Shown here: positions 22,030-48,411 of the stretch, piece after piece | Layout of the letters: the number at the start of each line of letters is the position of its first letter | How positions within the stretch are numbered: position 1 is the stretch's first letter | DNA from: Bigelowiella natans CCMP2755 | Lineage: Eukaryota; Protista; Cercozoa | Direction: 5' to 3' | Assembly (NCBI GenBank): GCA_000320545.1 | Contig: ADNK01001791.1 | Coordinates: forward strand, 37,832-101,831 | DNA length: 64,000 bases | Made by a program: the position numbers and the translations under genes | The notes under the pieces: model-generated | Databases searched by the model: none | Seen by the model: the letters and a program-made list of their open reading frames with translations, nothing else | Told to the model about the DNA's origin: nothing

Positions 22030-22916
22030 GAAAACGACTTGGATGCTGCTCCTGCGACAAGGTGTCCAGTGTCCAATTCATTGCAATGAACAAAACTCAA
22101 CTTGGTGCATCTTGAGCTCAAGTGCCAAACGATTTCAATTTCACAGATCGCTTCATCAATTGTGCATCTCTGGACCTGTTCGGTGCGACATCTGTCGAAA
22201 TGAACATGAGAACATTGTCACTTTGGGAGCCTTTGCTGCCATGTCTTCAAAGGAAAAGCTGTGCCTTGCTCTGGGGGCACGATTTGGTGCACCTTCGACA
22301 GGCAAAGAAATCGACAGGGCTCCGCCGAATCGATGTCCAGCTCAATGATTTTGCTGCTGTGCGCCAATTTGGTGATTTTGTCCTTCGTCTCTGTGCTCCT
22401 AGTTTCTGTCACATGCAAACCCGATCGAGATGACTGATTTCAGCTTGAACTTGGACACACTCCACCTACTAGCCTGTTCCTCTCTAGCTCCCTGGCTCTC
22501 TAGCTCTGATCAACAGATCAACAGGCAGTTCACCTGGCCCCAACTCATTGTCCTTGGCTTCCTCAGTCACAGGACACTGTGTTAGTTTTGTTGCTCAACA
22601 CCAACAGGGTGCTGACAAGTCCTCGCAATGATTTTTGTTGAGGCGCTGCTGCACGCATGTCCAGCTAGCTAGATGTGCACGTCCCATCTGCATGGCCATG
22701 TGGTTCTTGCTCACGTGGTTTTTGCATCACTGGGTCAATGCTTCGTTCATTGTTCATTGTTCAACATGAATCAACCAATTCGTTGACCAATCGCTTTTGT
22801 CCGGTCATCATTTCAAGCAAAAAGTGACACCATTCTTGCAAGTCTGGAAGTGGTGATGAAAGTGCCAGCTCCAGAGATCTAGAGATGCCTGCCTGTGTGA
22901 CTGCATCAAGTCCATT
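22030..22916. other. TpA-erased intergenic tract 1
   Basis: 9 TA in 887 nt by eye: 7 CTAG, 1 CTAC, 1 TTAG. Confidence 0.9.
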
Positions 22917-23247
22917 TATGTTTTAAGTTGCACTTTGTGTGTGCGCCCAGCCCAGGCCGGAGGACTGTGAGCATGTGTGCGTATCGTTGTCTAGTTCTAG
23001 AGTTATGCATCATTCGACAGGCCGTGTCGGCGCCAGAACCATCAGTTGTGCACATGCTCGATGACAAGTGTTTATGCACGATGCTGCTGTGTACGCCACA
23101 TTTAGACAAGTATGCGTTTAAAAAAAGTGCATGCAGATAATTAGATAATTCAGGTTTGTTTGCAGACACAGCGAAATAAATTTGATCATCGATAATTTGC
23201 CGCTCTATTGGCTAAGTTTTGTGCATGTACATATATTATGTATATAA

Positions 23248-23252
<5 letters not shown>

Positions 23253-23302
<50 letters not shown>
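23253..23302. repeat. (TA)n microsatellite
   Basis: Direct reading. Confidence 0.9.
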
Positions 23303-23311
<9 letters not shown>

Positions 23312-23412
23312 TTTGTCATACAGAGCCGGAAGAGACAAAAAGAGGATTCCCCATATACGTCAGGCACTACATAGGGCCAATTCTGCCTCTACCAGCAAAA
23401 TTAATGAAGTTA

Positions 23413-24756
23413 TTATATTTCCGGCAACCACCTACCCGTCTTCGTAAATTTAATAGTGACTCGTCTCCTTTTCTCAAACTGAGCCTGAGCGAATGCCTTG
23501 TTCAACTTATTTACTTTCACGTCCCTAGAATCCGCAAGAGAGTAATGGCGTTTGGCTCGCCGAGCTACATGGTTCGAATCTTTACTTTTCGTGTCCCCTT
23601 CTTCACCTTCAGCACTGCTTCTAATCTGTGCCGTTGTCGACATCATCATCACCATGCTCTTGCCAGCACCTTCTCCATCTAATTTGCTATCCTTAGCCTT
23701 TAAGTCCTGCGTCGATGTTTCCGCCCCAGCTGTTCCATATGCTGCATCCTGAGCGACAACACCGTTGGGCGTTGAGCCGTAGGCTCCTGCTGCTGCTGGG
23801 TCATAGTATCCTCCTCCTCCTCCATAAGCAGCAGCAGCCCCATATGGATATGCTGCAGCGGCTGCAGCAGCATACCAGTACTGCTGATATGCAGCAGCAG
23901 CAGCAGCTGCAGCATATCCAGCCCCTGCATTAGCCTGAGGCGAGGCCCATCGTACTCGGAAGCAAGAATTACCGATTTGTCGACCGTTGAGGCCCTGGAT
24001 CGCTCTCTGGGCCATCTCTCTAGTAGCATAAACAACCGTTGCAACCCCCTTTCCAACTGGCATGGCGAGGCTTGTGATTTCGCCATATTCCTCAAATTCG
24101 CTCCGGACTTCAGACTCCGTCAACGTGAGATCGATATTCGTGACCAATAGACCGGAAGTTGATGCTTGTACTGCAGGATCACCACTGCCCCCTGTGCCGT
24201 TCTTGGCCACAGCTACGGAGACTCTCATGGCGCGATTTGATAGGTAAACGCCGGTCATTTCTTGCACTGCGCGGTCGCGCTCCATTTGGTCCGTGAATTT
24301 AATGAATCCATACCCTTTGGATATGTTGGTCGCTGGATCTATAACTACTCGTGCTCCCGAGACCGTGGTATAGCGTTGACGGAAGCACTGCTCTAGCATA
24401 TAGTCTGTCACATCAGGTGCGAGATCTCCAACGAAAATAGAGAATGAGGGACCCACGCCGCTCCCTCCACCCGTCTGAGCCCAGTTCAGCCTATAATATT
24501 TGCCAGGATTGCTAGGGACCGGTTTAGAGTTGAGGGTGGTTAGAACTCTTTCGGCTATATCACGGGAGCAAAACTCCACAAAGCCATAACCAGCGATGTC
24601 CCCTGTTTCTTTATTCCGGATCACTTTGACATTCTCGATCACATTCTTGTAGTCCTCGAACATTCGATAGACGAACGCCTCGTCCATGTGGGCATCAAGG
24701 CCTCCAACCCATAGCGTCTTGACATTTGTAGGCCTCGAGTAGTTCGCTGCCGCCAT
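23413..24756 (-). CDS. Intronless triple-RRM RNA-binding protein, RBP45/RBP47/NAM8/TRNAU1AP-like
   Basis: TLWVGGLDAHMDE..GYGFVEF, SIFVGDLAPDVTD..SKGYGFIKF, third RRM LLVTNID..KGVATVVY; A/Y/Q-rich region. Confidence 0.92.
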   Translation of the reverse strand: MAAANYSRPTNVKTLWVGGLDAHMDEAFVYRMFEDYKNVIENVKVIRNKETGDIAGYGFVEFCSRDIAERVLTTLNSKPVPSNPGKYYRLNWAQTGGGSGVGPSFSIFVGDLAPDVTDYMLEQCFRQRYTTVSGARVVIDPATNISKGYGFIKFTDQMERDRAVQEMTGVYLSNRAMRVSVAVAKNGTGGSGDPAVQASTSGLLVTNIDLTLTESEVRSEFEEYGEITSLAMPVGKGVATVVYATREMAQRAIQGLNGRQIGNSCFRVRWASPQANAGAGYAAAAAAAAYQQYWYAAAAAAAYPYGAAAAYGGGGGYYDPAAAGAYGSTPNGVVAQDAAYGTAGAETSTQDLKAKDSKLDGEGAGKSMVMMMSTTAQIRSSAEGEEGDTKSKDSNHVARRAKRHYSLADSRDVKVNKLNKAFAQAQFEKRRRVTIKFTKTGRWLPEI

Positions 24757-25110
24757 GACCGCGAGGAGGAAGAAGCTTCGGGTTGTCACAGTACCGAAAT
24801 AATAACAAGAGAATGAAAAAAAAGAAAACAATAAAGCGGCTATTGTTAATTTGATGCCCCACCAACAAATGCTTGTAGATCAAGAAATACACCGAATACT
24901 TCGTAAAAGGATGCAATGACAAAGAGAAGTCACAGTCCCAAGTTGGCAAGGCACGAAAGAAAATGGAACCAGGAATGGAGGATGCACCTGGAAAAAAGCA
25001 ATTGGAAAAAAGATGGACGAGGATTTCAAATGAGATCTTCAAGCTCCTCGATGGCTGAAATGCCATTCTTGATTCCTTCTGGTTTCACTAGTTAGACCTC
25101 GCTAAAGTTA

Positions 25111-25664
25111 GTTCGAGGCACTGCGTTTCGCACACTGCAAATGTCTTGCAACGTTTTGGAAGTGCAGTTTGTCTGTGATCATTGTTTCATTGTTTCATTG
25201 TTTCTTTTGGGATCGACTGCATCCAGGCTGGTTCAGCTTGTGCATGCCTTCTCATGGGATGCCACACACAAGTGGCACGCATCTGCATCATCACGGAACA
25301 TGCGCCAGCCCACACATTGAGCTGGATCGACTTGCTAGCTTGTTGTGCGTGTGCAATTGCGCAGTTTTTGTTCGGAAAGCGAGGCGTCACACGCGTGAAC
25401 GGAATCACGCGATGTGCGGGCTGCTGTGTGTTCACAGTCCAGGTTGTCAGGCACAATCACAATTGTGATTTCGCTGCATGACGAGCACAATTTCAAATGC
25501 ACGATGCAACTCAAGTGTGACATGATCGAAATGCCATGGAATTTGCATCAGGTTTGACCCGCATGCACACATGCGTTTCCATTTTGCATTGTGCAAATGA
25601 ACCAATGCAATTGACTGCTGAGACGTGGCATGCATGCATGCGCCCTCATTGCAGCGCAGCTCAC
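25111..25664. other. TpA-erased intergenic tract 2
   Basis: A single TA (in CTAG, 25336) in 554 nt by eye. Confidence 0.9.
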
Positions 25665-25793
25665 TAGCTCAAGCTAGCCAGTCCTATAGTCTAGGGTGCA
25701 CATGCAAACACATGTGATTGATGACTTTGAAATGTGCATGATACCGTTGTCGTTCGATTCTGTTGTTCATGCTGCAGCATGCACCACGACGGG

Positions 25794-26564
25794 TCATGCT
25801 AAATGAATCTGTGGCCATGCAGGATCACTGAAGTATTGAACCTCCCATCTGTAACAACCCAGACCATTTGTTGTATCTTTGTCATAGAAGTTGAACGCAT
25901 AGCAACCGTATGTTGATGAATGTCCTGGCTCTGTTACACGAACCCGCGTGCTATTTGCCTGTGTGGTTATGTCATCATAACTGTCATTGTCGTCATTAGA
26001 TGCCATGATTATGACGATCAAACCTGCACAAGATATGTGTGCCAGTCATCAACTTCTTGTTTAGATGACACCACCATAGTGTAGGTGGATTTTCCGGGAT
26101 TGTCCTGTGAAAACATAACAAAAAAGAGAGTATTTTTTAAAATTCTGAACCACAAAAGAGCGGAACGCTTCACGTGAACGGATGCGATGATTAAAGCATC
26201 AAGTAAGTGACCTTCTCTTCTGGACCTCCCACCGTACAATTAGGGGCTGCACGTGTATTACACACTGCACAGAAGTGGTTTGATGTCGAATGGAATATCC
26301 GACATTCTTTCTTTTGGAGCAGGTTAGGAACCTTATGTGTTAGTTTAGTAATCTTTATTTAATGCAGTTCATGTGTTGATATTTATTTTATTGTCTGACG
26401 ATGACACTACTAATCATACCTCGTTCAAACCAACGACATCTCCAAGAAAGCTAGCTCCAATATCCAAATCCTATTAACAACATTCGGGTCACGCACACGC
26501 ACACACACACACACACACATAAAAATATACGTGAATATTAATACATCTGTATGTAAGTATATTA

Positions 26565-26649
<85 letters not shown>

Positions 26650-26863
26650 TCATGCATTCACTCACTCTCGCCCGCAAATTAGTCACGTAAACCAATTATA
26701 CGTATTGTCCGCCGAAATGAAGATAAAATATGATATTGCTTACGTTCGCATAAAACCATGTGATCTGTTGTGGTATTTCGGGTCGCTTAATCCTCTCACA
26801 CGTCGCTCCACATAAGGCTAATAAAAATACAAAAGCTGCAAGCTCTAGTCTCTTCAGTCCCAT
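25794..26863 (-). CDS. Signal-peptide-bearing VOC (glyoxalase/bleomycin-resistance) family protein, 5 exons
   Basis: Spliced product MGLKRLELAAFVFLLALCGATCE...QQITWFYAN|DLDIGASFLGDVVGLNE|V...ECRIF...FCAVC...|...TMVVSSKQEVDDWHTYLVQ|ANSTRV..P.HSSTYGCYAFNFYD...YRWEVQYFSDPAWP; all introns phase 0 GT-AG; follows the beta-alpha-beta-beta-beta VOC pattern. Confidence 0.7.
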
Positions 26864-27524
26864 ATCCAAACCCTAGGAAGAAGGAAAGAAAGAAAGAAAG
26901 AAAGAAAGAAATATTTGTGCAACCAGATTACAGCACAATCACACCACATCTACACCTAAACATACACAGAATCACAGCATATTCGAGTTCACAATACTCG
27001 CACACGAACACACCGCTACCATATACAAATAGATGTATTCACACATACGTACGCACACAACTTACTTAGTGCATCAAATGCACACACATACACACATACA
27101 CATGTACATGTTCCAAAATACATCCACACGCAATTCTCACTCCCTCACTCATATCTCTCTCTCTCTCTCTCTCTTTTCTCCCTCCCCCCCCCCCCCCCCC
27201 ATACACACACTATTTTGTGCTAAAGCATTTCACCATGCTAAGAAGGCGACTGTCTATTGTAGCCCGTGTGGGCAGGCATGAATTAAGAAAGAGATTATTC
27301 TGTGTAATAAGTGAATGAATGGAACTACACACAACATGTATTTTGAGGGAAAAACATCTAAAAATAAGACCCAAAAAAACTACGACAATTCGTGGTTATT
27401 TTTCCGTTCGAGGCTGTATTACCTTTTTGTTTCGGGTTCTAATAGCGCGTGAAACTACGTAAATAATCCTTTTATTGCAGCACAGGACAAAACAACAACT
27501 ACAACACTTTTAGATCATTTGGCA

Positions 27525-28754
27525 ATGGAGCGGCCGGAGGCCTCTTCCGCTGCTGCTACGGCAGCCGCAGCTACAGCTGCCTCGCCCTCCAAAGTTACCG
27601 TGGAGAACTGCGATGAGGAGAGCAATGTTACACAACGCGATCAGGATGGAAGTGAGGATCAGGATAGCAAGAAGGGGCAGAGCAAGACGACGGGGACTAT
27701 GAAGAAGGAGGAGGAGGAGGGGAAGAAGAAGAAGAAGAAAAAGCCAATCGTTTGCCTGATCATTGGGATGGCTGGGAGCGGAAAGGTCGAATTTCTCTCC
27801 AGCTTCTACTTCTCCATTCTAACAGTTTGCCGTGCTACTACAGTCTAAATGGCAGCTCCTCCCCTCTCCGCACACTCCTTTTCTTACTACTTTTTATCAT
27901 CATCACGTAGACAACTCTCCTGCAACGGCTCAATTCCCATTCACATCAGCACAAAATTCCAAGGTGTGTGTGTAAGAATATGTCTGTAAGTGTGTGTATT
28001 TCAGTGGTAGTAGAAGGTATACGATCAGACGATCCCCCCCCCCTCCTCCAACTAGTACGACCTAATCAATGAGCTAGTCTTCAAGTTCCCACCGAGTTCT
28101 GTCCTTTCCATTGTGGTGATCATGGCTAAGCGTCATTTTCTACTGTTCTTCTCCTCTTCCTCCTTCTCTTCCTCCTTCTCTTCTTCCTCCTCCTCCTCCT
28201 CCTCCTCCTTCCCTCTTCTTCTTCTTCACGATTTCAGCTACATCCTTAATCTAGACCCTGCGGTAGCAAAGGTGCCATACTCTCCTAATATTGACATTCG
28301 AGAGACTGTTCAGTACAAGGTATGGAAACTAATGTAGTTTATCTTAGTTCATTGCGTGCAAACCACGTCCAGTTGAATCCTTTGGTGGTTCCATCGAAGA
28401 GAGTCGTCTAGCCTGCCCTGGTAGCGCAAACCCAGTACTTCTTCTGTTTTTCAGGAGGTGATGAAGCAGTATAATCTCGGACCGAATGGTGGCATTTTGA
28501 CCGCGCTCAACCTCTTCGCAACCAGATTTGGACAGGTTGTACATGGGTGTCTGCTGAGCACAGCCGCGAGCTATCGCTTGATCTGCTGCTATTCTTCTCC
28601 TGATGAATAACTTGCTTGTATCCACCGAATAGAAAGTGATCATGCTTGTTTCCCTAGCATAGAGCATGGTAGACACAATCGACTCACCACCATCCCCAAC
28701 ATACGTGCTGAGTATTACAGCAACACTACAGGTCATCAAGAACATGCGATGATA

Positions 28755-28787
<33 letters not shown>

Positions 28788-29220
28788 GCATACTTCCAAA
28801 GGTGATGGGATTTGTCGATAAACGCGCGGAAGAAGTGAAGTATTGTTACGTTGACACACCTGGGCAGATCGAGGTATTATTTGAGAATGAGGAGGGAAGT
28901 GGGCGAGACTAAACAGAAGACATACCACACACACAGAATCACACACACACACACACACACGCAATTGATGTTCACAGACGTATGCGTGCGTACGCGATTG
29001 CTCAGAGTACGATGATAACCTTTTGGATGTTCTGTGACTACTACTTCTACCACAAACCTTAATTCTCCTCCCCCTCCCCTCCCCCCCCCTCCTCCTCCTC
29101 CTCCTCCTAATAATAATAATAAAAACTACTTCTTGGAAGGTGTTTACGTGGTCAGCATCCGGTCAGATTATTACAGAGACTTTCGCATCTTCATATCCAA
29201 CGGTAGTTTGTGTAGTAGTG

Positions 29221-29261
<41 letters not shown>

Positions 29262-30042
29262 GGTAGTAGCGGGAGAGCAACTGCTTGATTGCTGAATCAT
29301 CCCATCTCTTCATCTTCGTCAGGTGCTGGTGTACGTGGTAGATACGCCGCGTACTGTGAACAGCCCGACTACATTCATGTCCAATATGATGTATGCATGC
29401 AGGTACTACCACTAGTACTTGTATTATATAGTTTTTGCTGTTGTTGTTGTTGTTGTTGTTATTGGTGTTGTAATGTCCCTTTTCGCAACGACGAGTGTGA
29501 TGGTGGTGGTGGTGATGATGATGACTACTAAAAGCACGCAGAATAGAGATACAACGACATCTATCGATGGGTGCTCTGCATGCTAGTTTGCAGATTTTGG
29601 TGGTTGGAATGCATCATTCGTGTGTTGTGTTATACGATAATATTTATCGAGGATGAGAGCGTCCCTGTATGTTGATGCTGTACATGCTAGCGTGATCACT
29701 ATCACCACCACCACCGTTTCACCATCTTCCTCTCTTTTCCCATAACACGTAGCATCATGTACAAGTCGCAGTTACCGTTCATCATCGCATTTAACAAGGT
29801 GGAGGTTACTTCCCACGAGACAGCAACACGGTATGTAGTAGTAGTAGTAGTAGTAGAACTAGTACTAGTACTAGTAGCAGCAGCAGCAGTACAAAGTAGT
29901 ATTAGTAGCAGTATTAGCGGCCTGGTGATTCCAAGCAGACGAGAGATGAGGCAAGCAACATCCCAATTTCACCACCATCATCTTTGCAGCTCCTATCGTT
30001 AATATTTCTTGCAATCAATCAGCAGCTGCTGTTATGCTGCTT

Positions 30043-30073
<31 letters not shown>

Positions 30074-30480
30074 ACATATACATATAGGTGGATGACCGAC
30101 TTCGATGCCTTTCAGGAGGCTATAAATCAAGACAAGTAATCATCGTTCTATTCCAAAGAATATCGATTGTGTGTTGCTTAGCATTCAATAGCAGCAGCAG
30201 CAGCAGCAGCAGCAGCAGTGAGAGGCAATGATAGTTCTGCCTTTGGGGAGCAAGCGTCTTGCTTCGTTTCTTCTCGGTTGCTAGTATAACAATTGTAATA
30301 TATTACCACTACTACTACTACTACTACTAATACTACTATTGTTGATTACTAGGTCTTACATGTCCACATTCACACGCTCCATGAGCTTAGTGCTGGATGA
30401 GTTCTACAAGTAAGTTGCAGTACTACGACATCATATTTCAACCAGCGAAGAAGTAGTAGACGCGTAAGCAGGACGAGGCG

Positions 30481-30516
<36 letters not shown>

Positions 30517-31814: not shown

Positions 31815-32787
31815 AATAGTAAATATATGACAATTGTATCATCAGACGAGATGAGCATGGATTTCAGGTTGCACTCCTTTTGAGAAGCATGAAGAATTAG
31901 ATTAGCTTGTTCTCGAGAAATGCTAGTAGATAAAAAATTTCTAGCCATATTACCGTTTTCGGATCAATCTAATCCACTCAAATTGTGCGAGCGCAGCGTA
32001 TACGTCGTGCTCGCATACAATAGTAACATAGCATAGCATGATATGCTTTTTCTGTCTAGCTGTAGCAGTTATGAATCTTTAAGAGACAAGTAGTGTGTCT
32101 CTAAAATCAGTAAATCTAAAGCTGTAGCTTGATGTAGCTCTCTACAGCGGTCATTAGCGATCATCGCTACTTCTGGTCTAGTAATACTAGAGAACTAGCT
32201 ATGCATGTGTGGATGCGATGAGCTATGGTGCGGGCGCATTAGCGCTGTAGCCGCTGCATTGCACAGCTACATCAGGATGACCATTGAAAAAATTTAATTC
32301 TTCATTACATCCGTCTCATAGTGCGGGCGCGCTAGCGCGGGCACAGCGAGGCTAGTACGTGAGTACGCTACCATGACGAACGCTGGAACAACATCACATC
32401 GAGCGCACATGTAGCGATAGGCATAATAGCTAGACAGGCTTGTGTGACCTCCTATGATGCTACATAGGATGTATGCGTGTCGCATATATAGTTGCGTCGA
32501 TACGTGTCGAGGCAAATAGCTGGCGTTATTACTGCCGCGCCTAGCTAGCTAGAGCCGTCTAGCTAGGCGTGAGTCGTTCGCGGCATCGTATCGTTCACAC
32601 ACACTGCGCGTGCACAGCATTTGGATGATTGGTCAAGCTGGTAGCCACATATTCATGTGTACACATATGATTGTGCATGCTAGTATGCTATTAATCACGC
32701 TTTGTTACATTAAAAGATTCCCTAGTGTGCCGCTTTGATAGAACGATGGTACTAGCTGTGCGAACCAGTTTCTATGGCCCTCCAACT

Positions 32788-34177: not shown

Positions 34178-35635
34178 ATGTCTCGAAAAATCTCTGGTGA
34201 ATCCAGAAAATCTCGCATTCTGATTCCATCGCGACATGGTTGCTGCGTGTTTGTGCGTGTCCAGATGTCCCCTTGTGGTTCTTGCTCATGTGCTCATGTG
34301 GTTTGCATCAATGATTCATTCATTGCTCATTGTTCATTGTTCATTGGCTGAAAATTGTTGTGGTTGTGAGAAAGAAAGACAAATTGCGTGACGATGCATC
34401 CCCCTCTAGCTAGCTAGCTAGCTGGCCCTTGTGTCGCAAGTGTCAGTGTTTGTGCGTCAGTTGCTTCTTCGTCCCGCCTTGATTGCAGTTTTTCACGTTC
34501 ACGTCGTCGAATTTTGTGCACATGGCTAGCTGGTCCCAAACCTTTCTCAAGGTCGAAGGTTTCGCTTGACGACGAACAATCCTGTTCCTTCTGCATCGCT
34601 TTCGTGGTTGCGGTGGTGCTCTCTGGCTCTCGGTGAGCTGCCGCGCAGTGTCGAGTTCCCGGGCAAGGAAACACGTCTTTGAGGATGAACTCATCAAATT
34701 TCTGTCGATAATCCTCCATCTGAATCGTTTGCAGCCACTCGACGTAGCCCGGATCGACCATCACACCGCACACCGCGCAAGCATGGCTGTTGCACGTTCC
34801 TGGACAACAAGAGCACGAGCACATGTCGTTCTGCTCAGCGAGGTCGATTTGATGGCATCCGTGAGCTCGTCGACCGCTTGGATGCGATTTTTCAACAAAC
34901 GTGACACATGCTCATGATGGACAAAGCAATGTGACATGCACGTCACTAGCTAGCTAGATCACATGTGCAACGTGCAGCGTCTGGACGTTGCACGTCCATC
35001 ACATTGTGATCGTTCAGCGTTTGTGACGTTCCCGCCCTTTTCGCCTTTTGCGACTCGTGAGAACGCAAATGAATCGCGCAAACTAGCAAATCACGTTGCG
35101 ACGCGACTTGACTCCTTGCAAGTTCGTTCGTGACCTGCACAAGCGCGCACACGTGGCTTTGCGTATGTTTGCTGCCACACGACACGTGCAGTGGTGCGTG
35201 CACTGCGGCGAGGCGTGACACGAGTTGCGACATGAACACTTCGCTCTGAACTCACGTTGCACGCACATTGCACACACGTGCGCGCGCGTGCAGCCACGTG
35301 TCACGCAACTGCATGGATGTGTAGATGCTCACACATGACGATGATGACATTTTGCTCTTTAGCTCTGTGTCCACACAAGCGATGCGATGCAGCAACAAAA
35401 AAGAAATGCGTCGCAAATTTAGCGTTCATTCGGTTGTGAGCAACTTTCGTGTGTTGTGTCCATTGTTTTCGAACTCTTTGCTTCAAGAAAGATAAGAACG
35501 ATGCAACGCAAGTTGATCTCTCATGTGTGCTTGAGATCAGGTGGACACTCTTTGCACGTCACGCACTCATTGTGACTGCTTCTTGATGTCTTGCTCACGG
35601 AACAGCCAACTTTCTTTCTTTTGATCCACAAAGGG
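34178..35635. other. TpA-erased intergenic tract 3 (largest)
   Basis: 16 TA in 1458 nt by eye: 9 CTAG, 2 GTAG, 2 TTAG, 2 ATAA, 1 GTAT. Confidence 0.9.
34414..34824 (-). pseudogene. Possible decayed coding fragment with a partial SAM-domain-like segment
   Basis: VEWLQTIQMEDYRQKFDEF resembles the SAM helix 1-2 pattern V.EWL..I.M..Y...F; the rest is C/H-rich and does not complete the domain. Confidence 0.3.
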
Positions 35636-38671: not shown

Positions 38672-40074
38672 TTCTATGTGCATTTCACTTAAAACATAAA
38701 ATGGGAGGGTTTATCGATATGGATCGGTGGATGCATTCGTACGTTAAGGTCATCGGTTTGTTTGCACATTATTTCCTCGTTGCTGCATAATCCGAATAAT
38801 CGAAGCGGCTGTTGACGCACCTACGAAAGGTATTAAGAGGGTAGTCGGCATCATAAAGCAGAATACCATGATGATAATGGCGGTGTTGGTGTTTATGGTG
38901 GTGGTGATGATGACTTGCTCTCAATTTAGTAGTAGTAGTAGCAGCAATAATATAATAATAATAATATCAGCTTACTTTAACGACGACACAATACGGTCCA
39001 CGGTATCTTTCCTTAGCGGTGCTGTAGTATTAATGCCGAACATGATTACTATTATTTGACAACAAAGTGATAGTGCTGCTCACCGAGCTTTATCTACAAA
39101 TAATCCCTTCTATTTTGCTTTTGATACTATGTCGCTCTCCCCCTTCTAATACCACTACAGCGGTACAACTACTACCCACCGTGAACAACCTGCAAGATGT
39201 CTATTATCGGAGTAAAAAGGTTGCAAATGGCTACGACTAATCCTACTTCTCAAACAGCTCCTCATCGATAATCGTCACGAATTCCAGAGCAAGTAGATTC
39301 AGCACAATGTCTATTTCCTCAGAGGTAAGTACTGATCGGGGCAATATTCACACACGACGGCACACGACGACACACGCGCATAAATACAGATGCATGCGCG
39401 AAACACAAGAAAAATAGGGTGTGAGCTGTCGTTTACCTACGGCGCAGGCTAACGGGATGATAATGTACCTGACACAATATGCAGAGCCAAATTTAGTTTT
39501 TGCAAATAAAGAAGAAATATCTGAACTATGCATACAAGAAGGAGTTGCTAGTAATAACAAGCTCTCATTATTCGAGCAGCACATCGAATATGATGGCCAT
39601 GGCAGTGTACACTAGCTACTACTACTACTACTACCACTACTACTTCTTACTTACGCGTAAACAACATTTGTGAGGAAGTCCACGAACAATGTAAGGTTTG
39701 TCACATGTCCTACGCATTGATGATGACAGTTGTTGATCAGCAAAAAGTCAATGCAATCGTAAGGGTTATGGGGAAGTAACAACTGCAACTGCCTTCGTTC
39801 ACGATTTGCTCCGAGAGGCAAGTTTCCATGAAATATGGACAACCAAAATGATGAAAATTAACGCTCCCCCTCCTCCTTCCACCACGCATGATGACAACGA
39901 GTATAAAATCCGTCCGCAACGAAAATTGAAGGCTATTTTTTTTTTAAAATGGAATAGAAAAACCGACACCATATTCAATAAACTAATTGGCGAGCAGTAT
40001 TTCGTGAGCTCGAGCTCGCACGTCGAGTAGTGCGCGCAGTAGGAATTATCGGGCTACAAGGTCACGAAATACCG

Positions 40075-40143
<69 letters not shown>

Positions 40144-40446
40144 ACACCTTTGGCTATTTGTGTAAACTTCTTCGTTGACTCTGCAGCCTTTATGATATCA
40201 GATACAGATGAGTGGTTATAAATAAAACACTGAGCAGCTGCTCGTATGTATAGTATTATCAGCCGCTATTTGTCCGTGTGAAGTACCTTGACAGTGTAGT
40301 AGATAGATGCTGCGATTGCAGATGCAAAACGAATCCTTTGAGGAATAGTATATAGCAATATCAGAGATACTACCAACGATGCTTAACTATGATTCCTAGT
40401 TATTATCATTCTTATCATTATTGTTGTTATGGTTATTGACGCCACA

Positions 40447-40498
<52 letters not shown>

Positions 40499-42556
40499 CA
40501 CCATATCGCCGTTGATAGTCATTACTATGATAAAAAATAAGAAATCAAAATCGAAAATAATCGAGTCGTTTATTCGATACGGGCTTCGGTCTATAAAGTG
40601 TACAAAGAGGTTTTATAATTATATCGTACTACTCATTTCCCTCCCTCTCCTTGCCGCTCCCCCATTTTCCACTTCTTACTGTCCGTCTCTGCTGTCTTCG
40701 TATTTGAAGTCAAGGTCCCTGATAAGTAGCGGTTACCAAGATTAGACGAACGTTGCTAGCATGTGTTAGATAGTTAGTGTGACTCTTATATATTTTCCAC
40801 GACATTTATTTGCATGCACTTTCTTCTATTTGAGTTTCTGAGAGTCATTCGATGTTCTTTGTTAACTAATCATCTTTATCCTACATCACCACTTGGTGGC
40901 CCTTGTGTATTATTTATGTAATTACTGATAAATGTAGACGATATAAAGCAGCATCGTCTCCACGAAGAAGGGCAATAAGGATTCCGCGTAGCCAATCACT
41001 AGAGTTCAATGACATTACAGTTATGATGAGAATAACCGAATTTTGTTCTCTAGGATCCCACTTCCTAATCATCATTCACCTTCTGTGTTTGTCAAAACGG
41101 CGGAGAAGCTACGAAGAGTCGTATCGATGTGCATTAGAGATATCCGCGTCTACATAGAAGATCATGATGAATACAACGTATGTCTCAATAGGATAAGGTT
41201 CCCGACGGTCTTTGGTATGATATCATCGCAGAACAAGATCTTTTCGCTATTTGACAATAATCTGTATTTTGAATCTATTCTTGATATACAGTTGAGTAAT
41301 TGGCCATCCATGTATATTGTACGTGTATCTTTGAGGCGAGGAGAAGATGAACAGAGGTTTTAAAGTCATGTAGCAAATGAAACGGTTATTTTCGTGTCTT
41401 TTCTTAATCAGCACGCAACCTGCGAGTCAGCTTCAATACCATCGGGATCATTTTTTAGCTGAATACAAGAATTTTCATGATCAAAATGGTCATCAACAAG
41501 TGAAAGGAGGCATAAAGGATGGTAGAAAATTTGACGATTGTTGCACTTCATACGGCAAGACCAATATATCCGATTCGTCCCTCCTTATATCTTAAGCAAG
41601 TTGTTGCTATATCTCATTATCAAGGAGCACTTTTTTAAACTTTAATCATCATGGGGAGGGGAAGGGTGGAAATGACTACTTGATCTGCTCCCCAGGCCCA
41701 TCTCTCTAGAATATTTCCAATCTAATGATGATGATGATGATATCAATGCAACTATTTGACCATTAAAAACAAGGCGATTAAGAAATATCCTCGTGTTGCG
41801 CTGAGAACACCGAAAATCGATTTTATTATGAAAGGAAGCTAATAGTGGCGAGGGAGGGGGAGGGGATAACAGGCACTAGAACCAAAATAGGATTCTGTCC
41901 GCAATGAATAATAAGGGACCCCACCCCCCAACACAAACACACACACACACAATCATAGAAACACTAACATTGTTGGCGTGTAACTGTACGTTTTTGTGCG
42001 TGAATGCTCAATAAATGTGTGGAATGACCTTCATGAACGACTTCCTTTCATATTCAAAAGGCTCCACAACAACATTTTCATATACTGCTTTTACTGCAAA
42101 GCAACAGCGAAATGCACATTAGAAGGACGAGATCAGTTACTATGTCAGAAAGATCATAGTGTAATTCTGGTCTACAATTACAGCAGCATCATCATCAACA
42201 ACAACTACCACTACACTACCACTGCACTATTGCTAACCAAAGACGGTGAGACTCAAAATAGGAATAAAGATGAGCTTATCGGCAAAGACCCCCATCCAGA
42301 AGTTCAAGCACGTGCACGGTATAAGAATAGCAGTCAGCCTACCAGAGAAATACGAATGTGCGTTATGGGTGCATGACGGCGTCTAATGGAGAATTGAATG
42401 TTGTTTCCTTAGGAAAACACACGCACACACACACACACACACACACACGCACGCACACACACACGCCTATCTATGTCGATAAATATAAATGAGATCTTTT
42501 ATCCATCCCCCCTCTCACTGTCGTTGTATGCATGCATACATACATGCATGCATGAA

Positions 42557-42601
<45 letters not shown>

Positions 42602-44465
42602 ATGGCGTTAATGAAGAAAGAGCATATAATCTTTAGAGGTTCCAACGACTTCACTCCACAAACGGAGAATTTCCCCTATTATGGCCAATGGAAATAAGGA
42701 TGATTTAGCGTGGTGCGTTGCATGATATTCACCCTGAGAATGTGGGAATCGAGTTTGTAATTAGAAATAAAAGCTTCTGTATTTTAACAGGGCTTTGCGG
42801 ATAAAAAGAAGTTCTCTGTTGATCCATCTTGCATCCATAGTACGGTTGAATTACCCAGCAGCAACATCTCTTGATTAGGCTTATAGATCGTAAGAGAACA
42901 AAGTCACAGAACACAACAAAAGGTTCATACCGTAATCAGGATGTCAGAACGCGGCAGCTACGTATTGTAAGTTGTACCATGAAATAACATGTTGGCGGCG
43001 TGACTCACGATATACTTCTCCCCTCCTTCCCTTCCGCCCTTCTTCTTACAAGATGTATCCTCTCCTTCCAATTCGAAAGACAACGGAGTTGAAGCACATG
43101 ATCAAAATCTGGACGTAGTACATCGGTACTCGCAAGCAAAGGTGGCATAAATAATGCAAAAGAATAGTCAGGGTGTATAGAGGAGTTAGGTAGAAGTCCT
43201 CCTCTTCCCCTTTCGAGCTGCTGGTAACGTCCTACATCATCAAACACACCCAGGTTTATGTGCGACACGACAGATTTGTGTGTTTACTTATCCTTGGCTT
43301 CTGTCCCCTTCTTGAAATTACACTCGCTAAAGCACGGCACAGCACAGCACAGCACAGTACAGTACAGCACAACACCAGACATGTGTAGACTTTTATAATA
43401 ATACATATAATTTTATTCATATGTGGCATTTTGCGTTCCGACTTCGTAGTGCTCTCCTTTTGGGTGGACAGATGACGCGCTGTTTCCCGCTTTGCAGCAG
43501 CACCAGCACCAGCACATCATATACCCTAACCAAGCATAAATTCTTGTCGCCTTCAAGTATCTTTCCTTCGTTAGACCCTAAAAGTGGTCATCGTATTGAC
43601 TTTCATGGATATGATGGATACGATGAAAATTATGTGAATATCGAAATACCAGTTGAACCTACCACCTTAACTCTTTTAGCCGAAAATCAAATATATTATA
43701 CAAACATCAGCTAGGATGTGAATCGTTGTGGAATAGGAGGCTGTTGTCGAACGAAGATCCCAGTTCCACGAGTATCTTTCAACTAACCTACCTCGTCTAC
43801 GATTGTGCATGCAACTCATTTGTTTTACCTCTGACGGTTCAATAACCATGAGATCGTAAGCCCATTTTCGCTCCCATATGGGCAGCCAAAACAATGACCG
43901 CGCGTCCTTTAAGCTGATGGACACAGAATTAGCTCCGCATCATGTATCAGAAAAAGACTGCAGCATGCAAACTACTATCTACCTGTTTTCTATAGAGGTA
44001 TCGAAGTCGGTGTTAATTGCCACCCCACATTTTTGGAGCTAAAATGAGCAGATGCAATATGTAAGAGGACGATCACCATTACGCTTGGTCGATTAGTCCC
44101 ACCACCGTGCTTATATCTAAAGTTTACCCTTGAGGTGAGAGTCATAAGCTTCTTGATATGCTGTCGCTTGAGTTCTGCTCTTCCACTTTAGAAAAAACTT
44201 TCCTGCTTTGCGCCAGTAGCCTTGTTGTGTAGGTGTAGTAGTGTATCGCACGTATGGGTTCTGTCCCCCCCCTTTCGTTTCGTGTTTTCCCTTCCGTTTC
44301 CGTGCTGAATTTTGTCGACAAAGTCGTCGGTTCAAATGCAGGCCATTTTCCATCTATCAGCATCGAATTTTCCCCTGCGACAACCCTCGCAACGGCTTGG
44401 TACTCGACTCTGTGTCCCGGAAACGGCTTATTGGATCGGGGTTTCCTTTGGCGATTGTCGCTCAT
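35650..44465 (-). CDS. Large multi-exon uncharacterised protein with several TM helices; could be two genes
   Basis: Start MSDNRQRKPRSNKPF at 44465; many in-frame GT-AG exons, e.g. LTLFVDFLTNVVYA|YIIIPLACAV|VLTSEEIDIVLNLLALEFVTIIDEELFEK (~39250-39690), KVLDVLDFYLEELKISE, RAYFKLDAKIDSTFQI, FGDEKELKEFVESH. Not all junctions resolved. Confidence 0.55.
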
Positions 44466-44697
44466 TTTCCTTGTCGCAGTTAGAAAATGGAGGAATAAAC
44501 TGGCTATCGTTTCGCTCGTGAGGCTGCATATTACTCAGACAAAAAAAGCGAAGGGGCGCGCAGGGGCTCGAATTGGAGCGTTTTCGAAGAGGAGAACCGT
44601 AGATATCACAGCTAGTCTGTCTCTATTTTCCCCAGCGCATCCCATTCCGTTCGCAGAGTACCTTTTGAGATAAGGAAACAGGCCTTTCAGTGGGCAG
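44466..44697. promoter_or_regulatory. Compact bidirectional promoter between head-to-head genes
   Basis: Divergent ATGs at 44465 (-) and 44698 (+); inferred from geometry only. Confidence 0.5.
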
Positions 44698-47600
44698 ATG
44701 TCTAGAAATAACTCGAAGAGCCTGACCATCGTACGGTGGGTTAATTCAGTGCTGGCACGGGGCAAGTATGATCCGATCGAATCAATGACAGATTCCTCCA
44801 TGAGGACAGGGATAAAGCTTATGCAACTGATGGCAGTCCTCTCAGGGGAGCCTCTCCCACGCCATAACCAGCGATGTCTACTGAGAGCACAGAAGCTTGA
44901 CAATGTGGATCAGGCACTGAAGATGGTAAAGAGGGCCGGTGTACCGAATAGTTTAGTGCACACCGAGCACATTGTGGATGGAAATGAGAAGATGGTGTTT
45001 GGTCTTCTCTGGGCCATATTCAAGCGCTTTTCTCTCTCCAAGATCTCGCTTCGCCGAAAGAATGGTGGAGATGCACTAAGAGGGAAGGAAGGTTTGCTCG
45101 CATGGGTCAACGACAACCTCGCAAATGAGAGTGGATCCGCAGAGGGTAAAGCGGATGGCAAAGATGATGGCAACGATTCCAGCAGCAAGAGCAGTAATCC
45201 GGTCACGGTGGTCTCCAATTTCACCAGCGATTGGAGCGATGGGTCAGTGCTGTGTTCGATTCTTCGCCACAATGGCTCAGAGAAAACTGGAATGTCGAGG
45301 GTAGCAACGATGAGTGCTGAGGAGAAAATTAAGACTGGGTTGACAGTCGCCGAAAAAGAATTTGACGTTCCTAGGCTGCTTGATGTGTCTGACTTTAAAA
45401 AGCCTATCGACGAGCGGAATATCTTGGTTTACGTCTCCGAGCTCTACATCCAAATAAACGCTCAGAAAGCTGATCAAGCACAAAAATCGTTCGAGAAAAT
45501 GCGGAACGAGGCCAACACGCAAATTGGTGACCTAGAGGCCCAGATCAAATCTCTCAAGGAAAAGGTCAGTATCTCCAACAAGGAACTCGAGGACAAAAAC
45601 GCGAAGCTCAAGGATTTGGCAAGTGCTAATGAGGAGCTCCAACGACGGTTAGAGACAGTCGAAGGGGGGCTGAAGAATTGCCAGGAAGAGAAACAGCAAC
45701 ATGAGAAAGAATATAAGTCCTGCCTTGGCAAAAGTGAAGAGGAATTAAAAGATTGCGAGAAGGAGAAAAGTGACCTTCGTATGAAACTCTCGCAGCTTCA
45801 GGAGTCAAGGTTATCATAAAACTCACACAACCATCAAATACGTCTCAATCTTTATTGACGTAGATGTATCTTTCATCTCATCACGTGACGTGTTTTTTGG
45901 CTTGACAATATGTATTCCGTGCGTGCAGCGATGCCAGGGTATTGGAATTGGAGAGAGCGAATGAGGAGCTCAGGAGACTGCTGGAGGGGGTGAAAGAAGA
46001 TCTCAAAGATTGTCGAGAGAAAAAGGAGACACAGAATACAACGCTGTGAGTTAATCTCATTTCCTTCCTCGCTTTTTCATATCCGCATAAGTATAATGAG
46101 TACTTTTCTCCTCTTAGAGAAGCTCGTGTGCGTGCTTTCGAGGGCGAAAACGATAAACTCAAAAGCGAACTCCTGACTTGTGAGAAAAATCTCAAGCAAC
46201 TACAAACTACGAGGTAATGCCAATTCTTTCAGATAATGCATTTATGTTTGTTGCTTTCCGTTCCTCACTTACGCTATTTGTTGTTCGACGGCTGCATATA
46301 TAGAGACGCCCAAGCTCAAGAGCTAAACCATGAAAACGCCAATCTCCGGACACAGCTAGAAGGAGTAACTAAAGAACTCAAAGACTACAAAGAGAAGCAG
46401 AAAGAGGATGATTCATCTCTTCGCGGGACCGAAAAAGCACTCAGGGACTGTGAGAAAGAGAAACAGCAGCTGCACACAAAGCTGCAGCTTGCAAACGGAG
46501 AAATTAAAGATCTTGCACAAACACTCTCTGCGTTAAGGAAGGAGAATCACGACATGAAGGTACCCAAGACGACGACATTATGAGAAGAATCTCTTCGGCA
46601 AAATATGGGAATAAATGTCGTTATCTTAATGGATCCAGCATAATATGATAATCACCGTATTTTCTTCATCATAAATATCATTACTATCACTATCATCCCC
46701 ATAATTAACGGCCACCTGCATATTACCATGACTCACATATCCATTACTCTGGGTATGTTTCCAACCATCATATAGATTGCTAGCGCTGCCAATCATGGGA
46801 AGGGCTTGGTAGGTCAAGGAGGATCAGAAAACTCCGGCTTATTAAAACAGCTGCAAAAGGAGAATAGGGAAAAGGACATCAAAATCAAAGAGTTGTATGA
46901 GAAAATTCTCCACCTCTCGAGTTCATTGAAAAAAAGTCTCCATGCACAAATCACAGCTCAATCTAAGCTGCAAGTCCCTCGTTCTTCCCGATCAAGAACA
47001 AGAGGTGACAGTAGGAACAGCAGGACGAAGAGTGGTAGTCGGTCACGGTCACGGTCGCGTGCATCCTCGAGAGCTTCGGCGAGGAGTGCGTCAAGGAGCT
47101 CTTTTGGAAGAAGGTGTAATCATCTTAGAATGTTGAGGATTTGGATTCCATTTTTTTTTTTAATGTAGTGATATTAATGATACGGTATGCTATCGATCGA
47201 TGTTTGAGTGGCTGTATAGTCGTATGGCGTACATTCACATTGCTTTTAGAGAGTTTTTGCGTGATGTAAGGGTTTGTGTGCTTGACGTGAGGGTGACTCC
47301 GACTATATAACGTTCTTCACTATGGGCACAAGCGCATCAGTTATATTGTATTTGCCCCAATGTTTGTGTGCATATATGCGCTTGTTCATCGGATTTCTTC
47401 GTTAGAGACGACGAGAAGGAGAAGGAGATACAGCGTAAGATGGTGGCTGAGAAGATGGAGGAGTTTATGGCAAAAGACCCCCATGGGCATCTGCTCTCAA
47501 AAATCGAGAACAATGCGTTCCTCTTCGGCACACGGAAGATTCATCTCTTCATCGTGACAGGAGAGTTGCACGTGCGAGTTGGTGGTGGCTATGTGAGCCT

Positions 47601-47748
47601 CGCAGAGTACTGTGCAAAATACGGTCACGTAGAGCGTTTGCACCTGGAAAAGCAGAAGGAAAAGATTGAAGCGCTACTCAAACTTGCCGGCAAGGAAGAA
47701 ACAACCGAAGCTCCTACTTCCTCCACTACAACACCGTGGCGGTCCTAA
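44698..47748 (+). CDS. Actinin-type actin-binding domain (2 x CH) + coiled coil + C-terminal GAR (Gas2) domain protein, 6 exons
   Basis: TIVRWVNSVL..GIKLMQLMAVLSG..QKLDNVDQAL..HIVDGNEKMVFGLLWAIF (CH1); KEGLLAWVN..NFTSDWSDGSVLCSIL..AEKEFDVPRLLD..DERNILVYVSELY (CH2); heptad region; FLFGTRKIHLFIVTGELHVRVGGGYVSLAEY (GAR). Confidence 0.88.
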
Positions 47749-47769
47749 CTAGCTAACACGCTGGTGCTA

Positions 47770-48411
47770 AATGCAGCTTGTGCGATGATGAGTGTGCACA
47801 AGAACACAGAAGCACTCACCGCTGTGGCATTCATCTCCAGTCACATCACTGTGTTGGTTCATTTGAGCTGTGCTGGCATGCATGCACAATGGCAATGCAT
47901 GCATTTTGTTGAAGCATTGCGAGGCATTGAGATGTGCATCAATGGATCACAAAGACGAATTTGCTTCAGGTGTGGCATGCACAGATTCCACGCCCAGTGC
48001 GATGCACACGTTCACACAGCTAGACAGACGGATGTGTGTGCGTGCACTGTGAACAACAATGCACGTGCACCACGTTCATTTTGCACTCAGTGTGGTCATC
48101 ACTGCACGCACGTGCACGTCGCAGTGACGTGCAATCAAACGTGACGAGCTGCATGTTTGCGATGCGAGCTGTGGCTTGCTCGAAATACAACAATGCCCCA
48201 ATTTTTTTGCGGCGCACAACTGCTCACACACGCCAGCACGGGTGCCAGCATGCACGGGATGCCAGCGCGAGTCGCATCACGCGTTGCAGCCGGCCCGTCT
48301 AGCCGTGTTGCTGCGTGTGCTCGTGTGCTCGACAGGCTTCAAGAGGTTCCCTGTTGATCATCACATGCTGGCATGAGTGCCAAGAGTGTTGCGAGTGCTG
48401 GCTGACACCAG
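47770..48411. other. TpA-erased intergenic tract 4
   Basis: 3 TA in 642 nt by eye: 2 CTAG, 1 ATAC. Confidence 0.9.

What the first reader, a model, noticed from the sequence alone, without database searches (positions are those of the whole stretch)
22030..48411. Candidate reverse-RIP: strand-symmetric TpA->TpG/CpA hypermutation of intergenic DNA that spares CTAG
Seen: four sharply bounded spacers total ~3.5 kb and hold only ~29 TA. At ordinary composition well over 100 would be expected, and adjacent introns and promoters are full of TA, including (TA)n. Of the ~29 survivors, 19 are CTAG and 6 more are CTA or TAG. TG, CA, TGCA and CATG are abundant and CG is not depleted. Inference: an A->G change at TAH (H = A, C, T) on both strands removes every TA unless both strands read TAG, and only CTAG meets that condition. 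Established contrasts: 5mC deamination depletes CG, and fungal RIP creates TA, so neither fits. Context analogues are Pol eta WA->WG errors and the YA/TA preference of TadA-derived adenine editors. A natural DNA adenine deaminase, a modified-adenine decay route or error-prone patch synthesis are hypotheses. I know of no described eukaryotic system with this signature, but cannot search.
Basis: partly seen in the sequence, partly recalled or inferred. Interest (0 to 1): 0.95.

Follow-up and report, generated by a model that had tools for sequence, protein, structure and literature searches.

The report
TpA-erased hypermutation tracts in Bigelowiella

Summary
The four tracts (3,541 bp) carry 29 TA against about 215 expected; 19 are CTAG and 6 more have TAG on one strand. 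The window is Bigelowiella natans nuclear DNA (scaffold_42).

The proposed mechanism, A>G at TpA on both strands, is no longer undescribed. A 2026 bioRxiv mutation-accumulation study in this species found 231 de novo mutations in two integrated viral regions, essentially all TpA>TpG/CpA.

I add direct evidence from this window. The core of the largest tract (34474-34920) is a frameshifted fragment of a scaffold_10 gene that sits in a virus-like, densely packed, partly TA-depleted locus. The two copies differ at four adjacent CA/TG pairs (expected 0.15), which marks independent conversions of an ancestral TA.

"Spares CTAG" is only partly right. In the preprint's own table, a G 3' of the mutated A occurs in 9.8% of events against about 19-22% availability. 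TAGC/GCTAGC dominate the survivors. But CTAG does convert, giving CCAG/CTGG products. Protection is therefore kinetic, not absolute, and it is confounded by CTAG-rich spacers native to this genome.

Other first-stage notes report the same signature elsewhere in this genome.

Verdict: real, and a new instance of a just-described kind.

The parts
22030..22916 (.). Tract 1. TA-erased, between the 3' side of the RRM gene (- strand) and the 5' side of a STE20-like kinase gene (- strand).
   Evidence: 9 TA against 58.5 expected; 6 of the 9 are CTAG; meets the preprint's thresholds; kinase exons lie on the - strand at 19.7-21.3 kb.
25111..25664 (.). Tract 2. TA-erased, between an upstream VOC-like gene and the RRM gene (both on the - strand). 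JGI model 89018 treats it as an intron.
   Evidence: 1 TA (a GCTAGC) against 34.4 expected; exon map of P0001.
34178..35635 (.). Tract 3. The largest TA-erased tract, upstream of the SNARE gene (- strand).
   Evidence: 16 TA against 88.2 expected..
34474..34920 (-). Core of tract 3: a frameshifted pseudogene fragment homologous to Bigna1 model 129981 (aug1.10_g4689, scaffold_10) and to its allele on Logan contig L001.
   Evidence: the only hit among 1.84 billion representative proteins, E 7e-25; identity of the hit; blastn 85% over 401 bp, E 1e-128; alignment with indels and TA-directed differences.
47770..48411 (.). Tract 4. TA-erased. It starts 22 bp after the stop codon of the CH-domain gene (+ strand) and ends about 80 bp before a TATAAATA motif.
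   Evidence: 3 TA against 34.3 expected; sequence. CH domain.
34406..34421 (.). (CTAG)4 array, followed by CTGG, about 50 bp from one end of the viral-gene fragment.
34946..34957 (.). (CTAG)3 array, about 25 bp from the other end of the viral-gene fragment.
22665..22672 (.). (CTAG)2 array preceded by CCAG. The matching place in tract 3 reads CCAG with no array.
22699..22763 (+). Short element shared with tract 3, including (TTCATTG)n.
   Evidence: (z 9.9).
34274..34346 (+). Copy of the same short element in tract 3.

Best explanation
The four tracts are saturated footprints of the TpA-specific A:T>G:C hypermutation of Bigelowiella natans. On either strand, an A that follows a T is converted to G. 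Each TA therefore becomes TG or CA at random and independently.

The dose was finite, at roughly 3.5 hits per unprotected TA. A G 3' of the A, and especially GC, slows the reaction. Survivors are therefore mostly GCTAGC or CTAG, then sites with TAG on one strand.

What is shown: the direction of change, the TpA specificity and the strand symmetry.

What is inferred:
- The chemistry. The preprint's candidate is DNA adenine deamination by an ADAT2/ADAT3-like enzyme.
- The targeting. At least tract 3 is a relic of virus-derived DNA, which fits a defence aimed at foreign sequence. The origin of tracts 1, 2 and 4 is unknown.
For: 1. Organism: B. natans.

2. Experiment: 231 of 302 de novo mutations fell in two integrated viral regions, nearly all A>G/T>C at TpA.

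3. [quoted passage not shown]

4. Mass balance: among YR steps, the TA share falls from 25% to 2.9% and the TG+CA share rises from 57% to 77%.

5. Simulation: applying the rule in silico to ordinary window DNA reproduces GC 0.51 and rho CA/TG 1.6-1.8. It raises the 4-mer correlation with the tracts from 0.37 to 0.82.

6. Strand symmetry: TG and CA are balanced in each tract and interleaved at random.

7. Polarised comparison: the core of tract 3 against its paralogue L001 shows 4 adjacent CA/TG doubles (expected 0.15, P 2e-5). Three more sites are TA in L001 and TG/CA in tract 3, with none the other way. At one double, the reference protein P0121 still has Tyr where L001 has His and tract 3 reads Cys.

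8. Context effect: a 3' G occurs in 23 of 235 events (9.8%) against 18.6-21.7% availability, P 3e-4 to 2e-6. The survivor-based rate ratio of about 0.37 agrees with this.
Against: - No mutation-accumulation hit lies in these tracts, which have almost no TA left to hit.
- Tracts 1, 2 and 4 have no detectable foreign homologue, protein domain or repeat family.
- The simulation under-predicts CG (0.6-0.7 against 0.89) and GC. Tracts 2-4 have unusually high purine/pyrimidine alternation, so their ancestors were not average DNA.
- CTAG survival (19 sites) exceeds the roughly 3 predicted from the 3'-G slowdown on an ordinary ancestor.
- The partly depleted viral locus L001 shows no clear CTAG enrichment.
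- That L001 and aug1.10_g4689 lie inside the preprint's NCLDV region is inferred from composition and gene density. It is not shown.
Confidence: 0.85

Rival explanations
1. The CTAG survivors are not protected. They reflect a CTAG/TAGC-rich ancestral sequence class and microsatellite growth of (CTAG)n, and CTAG mutates like any TAG site.
For: - TA-replete spacers in this window carry 23.6 CTAG/kb against 1.9/kb elsewhere.
- They share the tracts' low CC/GG, high GC and, for two of the three, their RY-space spectrum.
- With such an ancestor, the 3'-G slowdown measured in the mutation-accumulation data predicts about the observed number of survivors (note).
- Six of the 19 CTAG are extra units of tandem arrays.
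- L001 shows no CTAG enrichment at half depletion.
Against: - Retention is graded by the 3' dinucleotide: TAGC 1.27, TAGA 0.43, TAGT 0.21, TAGG 0.15, TAH 0.02-0.11. This suggests a real extended context effect.
- Tract 1 has an ordinary RY composition, yet 6 of its 9 survivors are CTAG.
Confidence: 0.3
2. The footprint is the same but the chemistry differs. The T of TpA is modified, for example oxidised by a TET/JBP-type enzyme to 5hmU or 5fU, which mispairs with G. This would give T>C rather than adenine deamination.
For: TpA is palindromic, so T>C on one strand cannot be told from A>G on the other. The disfavoured 3' G of the A equals a 5' C of the T. This argument is an inference from established base-pairing chemistry, recalled from memory.
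Against: - The preprint finds an ADAT2 homologue with the motifs linked to DNA editing.
- U33-A34 is the natural ADAT/TadA target context (established knowledge).
- No TET/JBP candidate was examined here.
Confidence: 0.15
3. The tracts arrived already TA-poor as foreign DNA of unusual composition and were not mutated in place.
For: The core of tract 3 is derived from a virus-like locus that is itself TA-poor, at rho 0.42.
Against: - The two copies resolved the same ancestral TA sites differently, CA against TG, four times. Tract 3 lost TA that L001 keeps.
- Tract 3 is far more depleted than its relative.
- Tracts 2-4 match native TA-replete spacers in RY space.
Confidence: 0.05
4. TA is removed by selection, because the tracts are UTRs or promoters in which TA or UA is harmful.
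For: All four tracts lie between tandem genes, downstream of a stop codon and upstream of the next gene's TA-replete core promoter.
Against: - Neighbouring spacers of the same class are TA-rich.
- One neutral mutation rule explains most of the 4-mer spectrum.
- Tract 3 holds a frameshifted pseudogene.
- A mutational mechanism has been measured directly.
Confidence: 0.04

Closest known systems
TpA hypermutation of integrated viral DNA in Bigelowiella natans (Mettrop et al., bioRxiv 10.64898/2026.01.13.699255)
   Same: Same species. Same signature: TpA lost, CpA+TpG gained, CpG unaffected, strand-symmetric. The tracts pass the paper's own window thresholds, and the core of tract 3 is related to a scaffold_10 gene in a virus-like locus.
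   Different: - The tracts are 0.55-1.6 kb, below the paper's cluster size of at least 3 kb.
- They are saturated, at rho 0.13 against 0.45 for the paper's NCLDV region.
- They sit between ordinary host genes on scaffold_42.
- The paper does not analyse flanking context and never mentions CTAG.
- Three of the four tracts have no recognisable foreign origin.
Repeat-induced point mutation (RIP) of fungi
   Same: A localised, saturating transition hypermutation that inactivates invading or repeated DNA and leaves a dinucleotide footprint.
   Different: RIP converts C to T, mainly at CpA, and so creates TpA. Here TpA is destroyed and CpA/TpG are created. No repeat dependence is shown: the tracts are not one family.
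ADAT2/ADAT3 and TadA adenosine deaminases, and TadA-derived adenine base editors
   Same: They act on an A preceded by U or T (U33-A34 of tRNA) and give A>I, read as G. The preprint names an ADAT2 homologue, Bn78255, as its candidate.
   Different: Natural ADAT/TadA enzymes edit tRNA. Genome-scale DNA editing by one has not been shown in this organism, and no enzyme was tested here.
ADAR editing and hyper-editing of double-stranded RNA
   Same: A>G outcome with a preference for a 5' U.
   Different: ADARs favour a 3' G (recalled from memory), whereas here a 3' G is disfavoured. The substrate here is heritable nuclear DNA, including a transcriptionally silent region.
APOBEC3-type antiviral hypermutation
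   Same: A deaminase-type defence that mutates foreign nucleic acid in a dinucleotide context.
   Different: APOBEC3 converts C to U rather than A to I. APOBEC clusters are strand-coordinated, whereas TG and CA here are interleaved at random.

Membership tests
B. natans TpA>TpG/CpA hypermutation footprint (Mettrop et al. 2026) | [quoted passage not shown] | tested here: met
   exactly four intervals of the window pass, and each contains one tract.
B. natans TpA>TpG/CpA hypermutation footprint (Mettrop et al. 2026) | Direction of change is A:T>G:C at TpA | tested here: met
   tract 3 against L001 and P0121 shows 4 CA/TG doubles (P 2e-5) and 3 sites TA>TG/CA, with none in reverse. For tracts 1, 2 and 4 the support is compositional only.
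B. natans TpA>TpG/CpA hypermutation footprint (Mettrop et al. 2026) | Target is of foreign (viral or transposon) origin | tested here: inconclusive
   The core of tract 3 is homologous to scaffold_10 model aug1.10_g4689. That gene lies in a dense, intronless, ORFan-rich locus with rho TA 0.42. Tracts 1, 2 and 4 have no homologue, domain or repeat.
B. natans TpA>TpG/CpA hypermutation footprint (Mettrop et al. 2026) | Cluster of at least three consecutive depleted 1-kb windows | tested here: not met
   The tracts are 0.55-1.6 kb. They are below the paper's cluster definition but within its window-level signal.
B. natans TpA>TpG/CpA hypermutation footprint (Mettrop et al. 2026) | Elevated de novo mutation rate in mutation-accumulation lines | not testable with these tools
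   The only scaffold_42 event in Table S2 is an ordinary C>T at 108270. The tracts have almost no TA left.
Fungal RIP | C>T at CpA creating TpA, in duplicated sequence | tested here: not met
   TA is depleted and CA/TG are enriched. The tracts are not duplicates of one another.
5-methylcytosine deamination decay | CpG depletion with TpG/CpA gain | tested here: not met
   rho CG is 0.89 in the tracts and 0.86 elsewhere.
DNA polymerase eta WA>WG errors | A>G at both TA and AA | tested here: not met
   AA/TT are not depleted, at rho 1.09. Nearly all mutation-accumulation events are at TpA.
ADAR-type editing | 5' U preferred and 3' G preferred | tested here: not met
   5' T is met. A 3' G is under-represented about 2-fold. 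The ADAR 3' preference is recalled from memory.
ADAT2/TadA-like DNA adenine deamination | A deaminase acting on dA in the T-A context of nuclear DNA | not testable with these tools
   The candidates Bn78255 and Bn77986 are named only in the preprint. No enzyme was examined here.

The most novel reading that the evidence does not exclude
GCTAGC/CTAG palindromes are actively shielded, for example by N6-methylation of the A in CTAG or by a bound protein. The TpA editor would then distinguish marked from unmarked DNA, much as a restriction-modification system does. In that case the editor also reshapes native intergenic spacers (tracts 1, 2 and 4), not only foreign DNA.
Probability: 0.12. Interest if true: 0.8.

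Novelty: new member of a known kind. Interest (0 to 1): 0.5.

Why it matters
A natural, heritable, dinucleotide-specific A:T>G:C editor of nuclear DNA would mirror fungal RIP and animal APOBEC defence. It would also be a possible source of adenine-editing enzymes. That discovery belongs to the 2026 preprint.

This window adds three points:
- The process has run to saturation on small relics scattered among ordinary host genes, below the preprint's detection size.
- A copy-against-copy comparison gives a polarised, sequence-level confirmation that does not depend on the mutation-accumulation lines.
- The reaction has an extended 3' context, TAGC << TAGD < TAH, that the preprint's own table supports but does not discuss. 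This context constrains which enzyme is responsible.

Rate arithmetic from the preprint's numbers gives about 1.1e-5 per TpA per generation in the lines. At that rate saturation takes about 3e5 generations. Yet the viral copy keeps over half of the reconstructable TA sites after about 6% background divergence from the tract 3 fragment. The process must therefore be episodic or recently switched on. This last step is an inference.

Tried and rejected
- Purine/pyrimidine-coded blastn of the tracts against the window. E-values in a two-letter alphabet are meaningless; only the known tract 1/tract 3 match stood out.
- Transition-tolerant Smith-Waterman alignment, tract against tract and tract against window. 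There is no unmutated paralogue in the window, and only tracts 1 and 3 share a short element.
- Pfam scan of 10 tract ORFs and of 17 other window ORFs. Nothing turned up in the tracts and there are no transposon domains nearby.
- Rfam and tRNA scans: nothing found.
- A suspected paralogue of the VOC-like gene at the right edge of tract 3: chance similarity only.
- The right edge of tract 3 as a splice site, and the idea that tracts are UTR exons: no transcript data could be reached. Exact-protein look-ups for window genes failed.
- Showing that L001 is viral by name: two IMG/VR scans and one protein search gave only anonymous relatives.
- Blanc et al. 2015 could not be read.
- A fifth candidate at 6901-7400 is a (TG)n microsatellite plus coding DNA, not a tract.
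- Edge bias of CTAG within the tracts: checked by eye, not evident.
Full report
**Identity of the window**

A 472-aa ORF (23413-24831, - strand; three RRM domains) is 97% identical to JGI model Bigna1 89018, named estExt_fgenesh1_pg.C_420096. The window is therefore nuclear DNA of the chlorarachniophyte alga Bigelowiella natans, on scaffold_42. It has 45% G+C, many introns and many microsatellites.

They hold 29 TA where base composition predicts 215 (rho 0.13, against 0.81 elsewhere).
- 19 survivors are CTAG, 6 have TAG on one strand only, and 4 are other contexts.
- CA and TG are raised (rho 1.81 and 1.67). CG is unchanged (0.89 against 0.86).
- TGCA, CATG, GCATGC, GTGCAC and CACGTG are 3- to 12-fold over expectation. 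TATA and ATAT are absent.
- TA-free gaps reach 372 bp, where 0.006 gaps of 220 bp or more are expected.
- The flanks return to 3.7-6.0 TA per 100 bp within 300 bp.
- CC/GG are also low (0.54) and GC is high (1.38).

**The mechanism has already been published**

[quoted passage not shown] Its main results are:

- In 15 mutation-accumulation lines of B. natans, 231 of 302 nuclear point mutations fell in two integrated viral regions. One is an NCLDV-like region (scaffold_10:336000-521500) and the other a virophage-like region (scaffold_146).
- The rate there is about 1000-fold above background.
- Almost all events are A>G or T>C, and the authors report that all of these fall on TpA.
- The authors scanned the genome in 1-kb windows. 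They defined depleted windows as rho TpA <=0.43 with rho CpA+TpG >=1.52. They found 124 clusters of three or more such windows.
- They propose an ADAT2-like DNA adenine deaminase, Bn78255.

Sliding 1-kb windows across this window pass those thresholds at exactly four places, one per tract. None reaches 3 kb, so these tracts fall below the paper's cluster definition. The scaffold_42 models listed in the part of the supplement that is held (pg.42_#_80 and #_151) are not the ones here.

**Quantitative fit of the rule**

- Among pyrimidine-purine steps, the TA share falls from 25% to 2.9% and the TG+CA share rises from 57% to 77%. The CG share hardly moves.
- I applied 'A>G at TA on either strand, not when followed by G' in silico to ordinary window DNA. 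G+C rises from 0.45 to 0.51 (observed 0.504) and rho CA/TG rises to 1.6-1.8 (observed 1.74). CC/GG falls and GC rises. The correlation of the tetranucleotide spectrum with the tracts rises from 0.37 to 0.82.
- TG and CA are balanced within each tract (95/85, 69/68, 155/128, 83/83). They are interleaved at random (runs z about 0), whereas ordinary DNA is strand-clustered (mean z -1.45). Hits are therefore independent on the two strands, unlike APOBEC-type strand-coordinated clusters.

**What the tracts are**

- They are not one repeat family. Only tracts 1 and 3 share a 70-100 bp element, and a (TTCATTG)n-like minisatellite recurs in tracts 1-3.
- No tract ORF has a Pfam domain, and there is no Rfam family or tRNA.
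- A 136-aa ORF in tract 3 gave a single hit among 1.84 billion representative proteins. The hit is Bigna1 129981, model aug1.10_g4689, on scaffold_10.
- A 98%-identical allele, P0122, lies on a 43-kb Logan contig. I fetched 21.5 kb of that contig as L001.
- L001 is packed with intronless ORFs. These include a 2,194-aa ORF, and nine of the L001 ORFs scanned against Pfam gave a single match, DUF5767. L001 has G+C 0.467 and rho TA 0.42.
- The preprint gives 45.5% G+C and rho 0.45 for its NCLDV region. That L001 is that region, or a strain variant of it, is my inference. I could not obtain coordinates or named viral relatives.

**Polarised evidence from tract 3**

- Window 34474-34920 (- strand) aligns to L001 10176-10593, with 85% identity over 401 bp by blastn (E 1e-128). 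Tract 3 carries frameshifting indels, so it is a pseudogene fragment.
- There are 392 aligned columns, with 29 transitions and 7 transversions.
- Four differences are adjacent doubles in which one copy reads CA and the other TG. Two copies that resolved the same ancestral TA independently should leave exactly this mark. The expected number is 0.15 (P 2e-5).
- At one of these doubles the reference protein still has Tyr (TAY), L001 has His (CAC), and tract 3 reads TGC.
- Three further sites are TA in L001 and TG or CA in tract 3, with none the other way.

**The CTAG exception is real as a bias but not as a rule**

Evidence for a bias:

- Table S2 of the preprint gives the three bases around each event. 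My hand tally of all TpA events, corrected for strand, gives the base 3' of the mutated A as A 74, C 57, G 23 and T 81, with n = 235.
- A 3' G is thus 9.8% of events, against 18.6-21.7% of available sites in ordinary or coding window DNA (P 3e-4 to 2e-6). That is a per-strand rate ratio of about 0.4-0.5. The availability figures come from this window, not from the viral regions themselves.
- Survivor counts in the tracts give about the same ratio, 0.37. Relative to ordinary DNA, 2.9% of unprotected sites and 8.8% of half-protected sites survive (note).
- Retention by the 3' dinucleotide is graded: TAGC 1.27, TAGA 0.43, TAGT 0.21, TAGG 0.15 and TAH 0.02-0.11. The best-kept context is TAGC/GCTAGC rather than CTAG as such.

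Evidence that CTAG is not immune:

- L001 has CTAG where tract 3 reads CCAG.
- (CTAG)n arrays end in CCAG or CTGG at three of seven arrays.
- In the tracts, CTGG+CCAG are twice as frequent as elsewhere, and GCTGGC+GCCAGC are 7.7 times as frequent.
- The half-depleted locus L001 shows only the modest shift expected from a partial slowdown. Half-protected sites are 37.7% against 31%, and CTAG is 4.1% against 3.5%.

A confound:

- This genome has TA-replete spacers with 23.6 CTAG/kb (18700-19620, 31960-32760, 52230-52750).
- These share the tracts' low CC/GG and high GC. Two of the three also match tracts 2-4 in purine/pyrimidine space, at r 0.86-0.88 against a window median of 0.11.
- If the tracts began as such DNA, the partial slowdown alone predicts about the observed number of CTAG. 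If they began as average DNA, only about 3 are predicted against 19 seen, and extra protection would be needed.
- The data here cannot separate these two cases.

**Position relative to genes**

All four tracts lie between tandem genes. Each is downstream of one gene's stop codon and upstream of a short TA-replete stretch before the next gene:

- Tract 1: RRM gene to kinase gene.
- Tract 2: VOC-like gene to RRM gene.
- Tract 3: unidentified upstream gene to SNARE gene.
- Tract 4: CH-domain gene to a TATAAATA motif at 48494.

I could not test whether the tracts are transcribed.

**Rates (inference from the preprint's numbers)**

- 211 events over 6,169 TpA and 3,132 generations is about 1.1e-5 per TpA per generation. 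Saturation at that rate needs only about 3e5 generations.
- The non-TA divergence between tract 3 and L001 is about 6%. At the background mutation rate this implies on the order of 1e7-1e8 generations of separation.
- L001 nevertheless keeps 5 of about 9 reconstructable TA sites in the aligned block.
- The long-term average rate must therefore be far below the rate in the lines. This agrees with the preprint's finding that only some lines hypermutate.

**Residuals that the simple rule does not explain**

- CG and GC are higher than simulated.
- Tract 3 reads CG twice where L001 has TG or CA.
- Table S2 holds three T>C events in an ATG context.
- Together these hint at a weak second hit at TpG/CpA.

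**Verdict**

- The kind is already described, in a 2026 preprint. These tracts are new, smaller, saturated members of it.
- The new elements are the extended 3' context and the small viral relic.
- The chemistry, adenine deamination or thymine modification, cannot be decided from sequence because TpA is palindromic.
- Other first-stage notes report the same signature on many other pieces of this genome, including transposon islands. I could not read those pieces.

Noticed in passing
window 18700-19620, 31960-32760, 52230-52750: TA-replete spacers with 23.6 CTAG/kb (1.9/kb elsewhere) and TAGC+GCTA at 39/kb. They have rho GC 1.71 and CC/GG 0.5. They look like un-erased counterparts of tracts 2-4. 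Why CTAG/TAGC is so abundant there is unexplained.
   Followed up: partly
window 23416-27046 (- strand): JGI model 89018 (662 aa) appears to fuse two genes. One is a VOC/glyoxalase-like N-terminal part (exons at 27046-25836) and the other is the RRM protein (24993-23416). The model treats TA-erased tract 2 as an intron.
   Followed up: partly
preprint Table S2: Strand asymmetry among events with a 3' G: 4 are recorded as TAG (A>G) and 19 as CTA (T>C), binomial P 0.003. The other three contexts are symmetric. This may reflect gene orientation and stop-codon avoidance in the viral region.
   Followed up: no
window 34406-34421 and 34946-34957: (CTAG)4 and (CTAG)3 arrays bracket the viral-gene fragment in tract 3 at about 25-50 bp. 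It is unclear whether they mark the ends of an insertion.
   Followed up: no
window 22746-22763, 25170-25205, 34312-34346: A (TTCATTG)n / (TTTCATTG)n minisatellite recurs, on the + strand, in tracts 1, 2 and 3. In tracts 1 and 3 it is preceded by a conserved 19-mer, TGTGGTTCTTGCTCAYGTG.
   Followed up: partly
L001 (Logan ERR12177241 contig 174209), 1-21473: A dense array of intronless ORFan genes, including a 2,194-aa ORF and one DUF5767 protein. rho TA is 0.42, with GTAC the best-kept palindromic TA context (o/e 0.79) and ATAT the most depleted (0.18). P0122 differs from the reference protein P0121 at 10 of 490 residues, including Tyr>His and Met>Val.
   Followed up: partly
preprint Table S2, and tract 3 against L001: Three T>C events in an ATG context, and two sites where tract 3 has CG against TG or CA in L001. 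These may reflect a weak secondary activity at TpG/CpA, which would help explain why CG is not diluted in the tracts.
   Followed up: no
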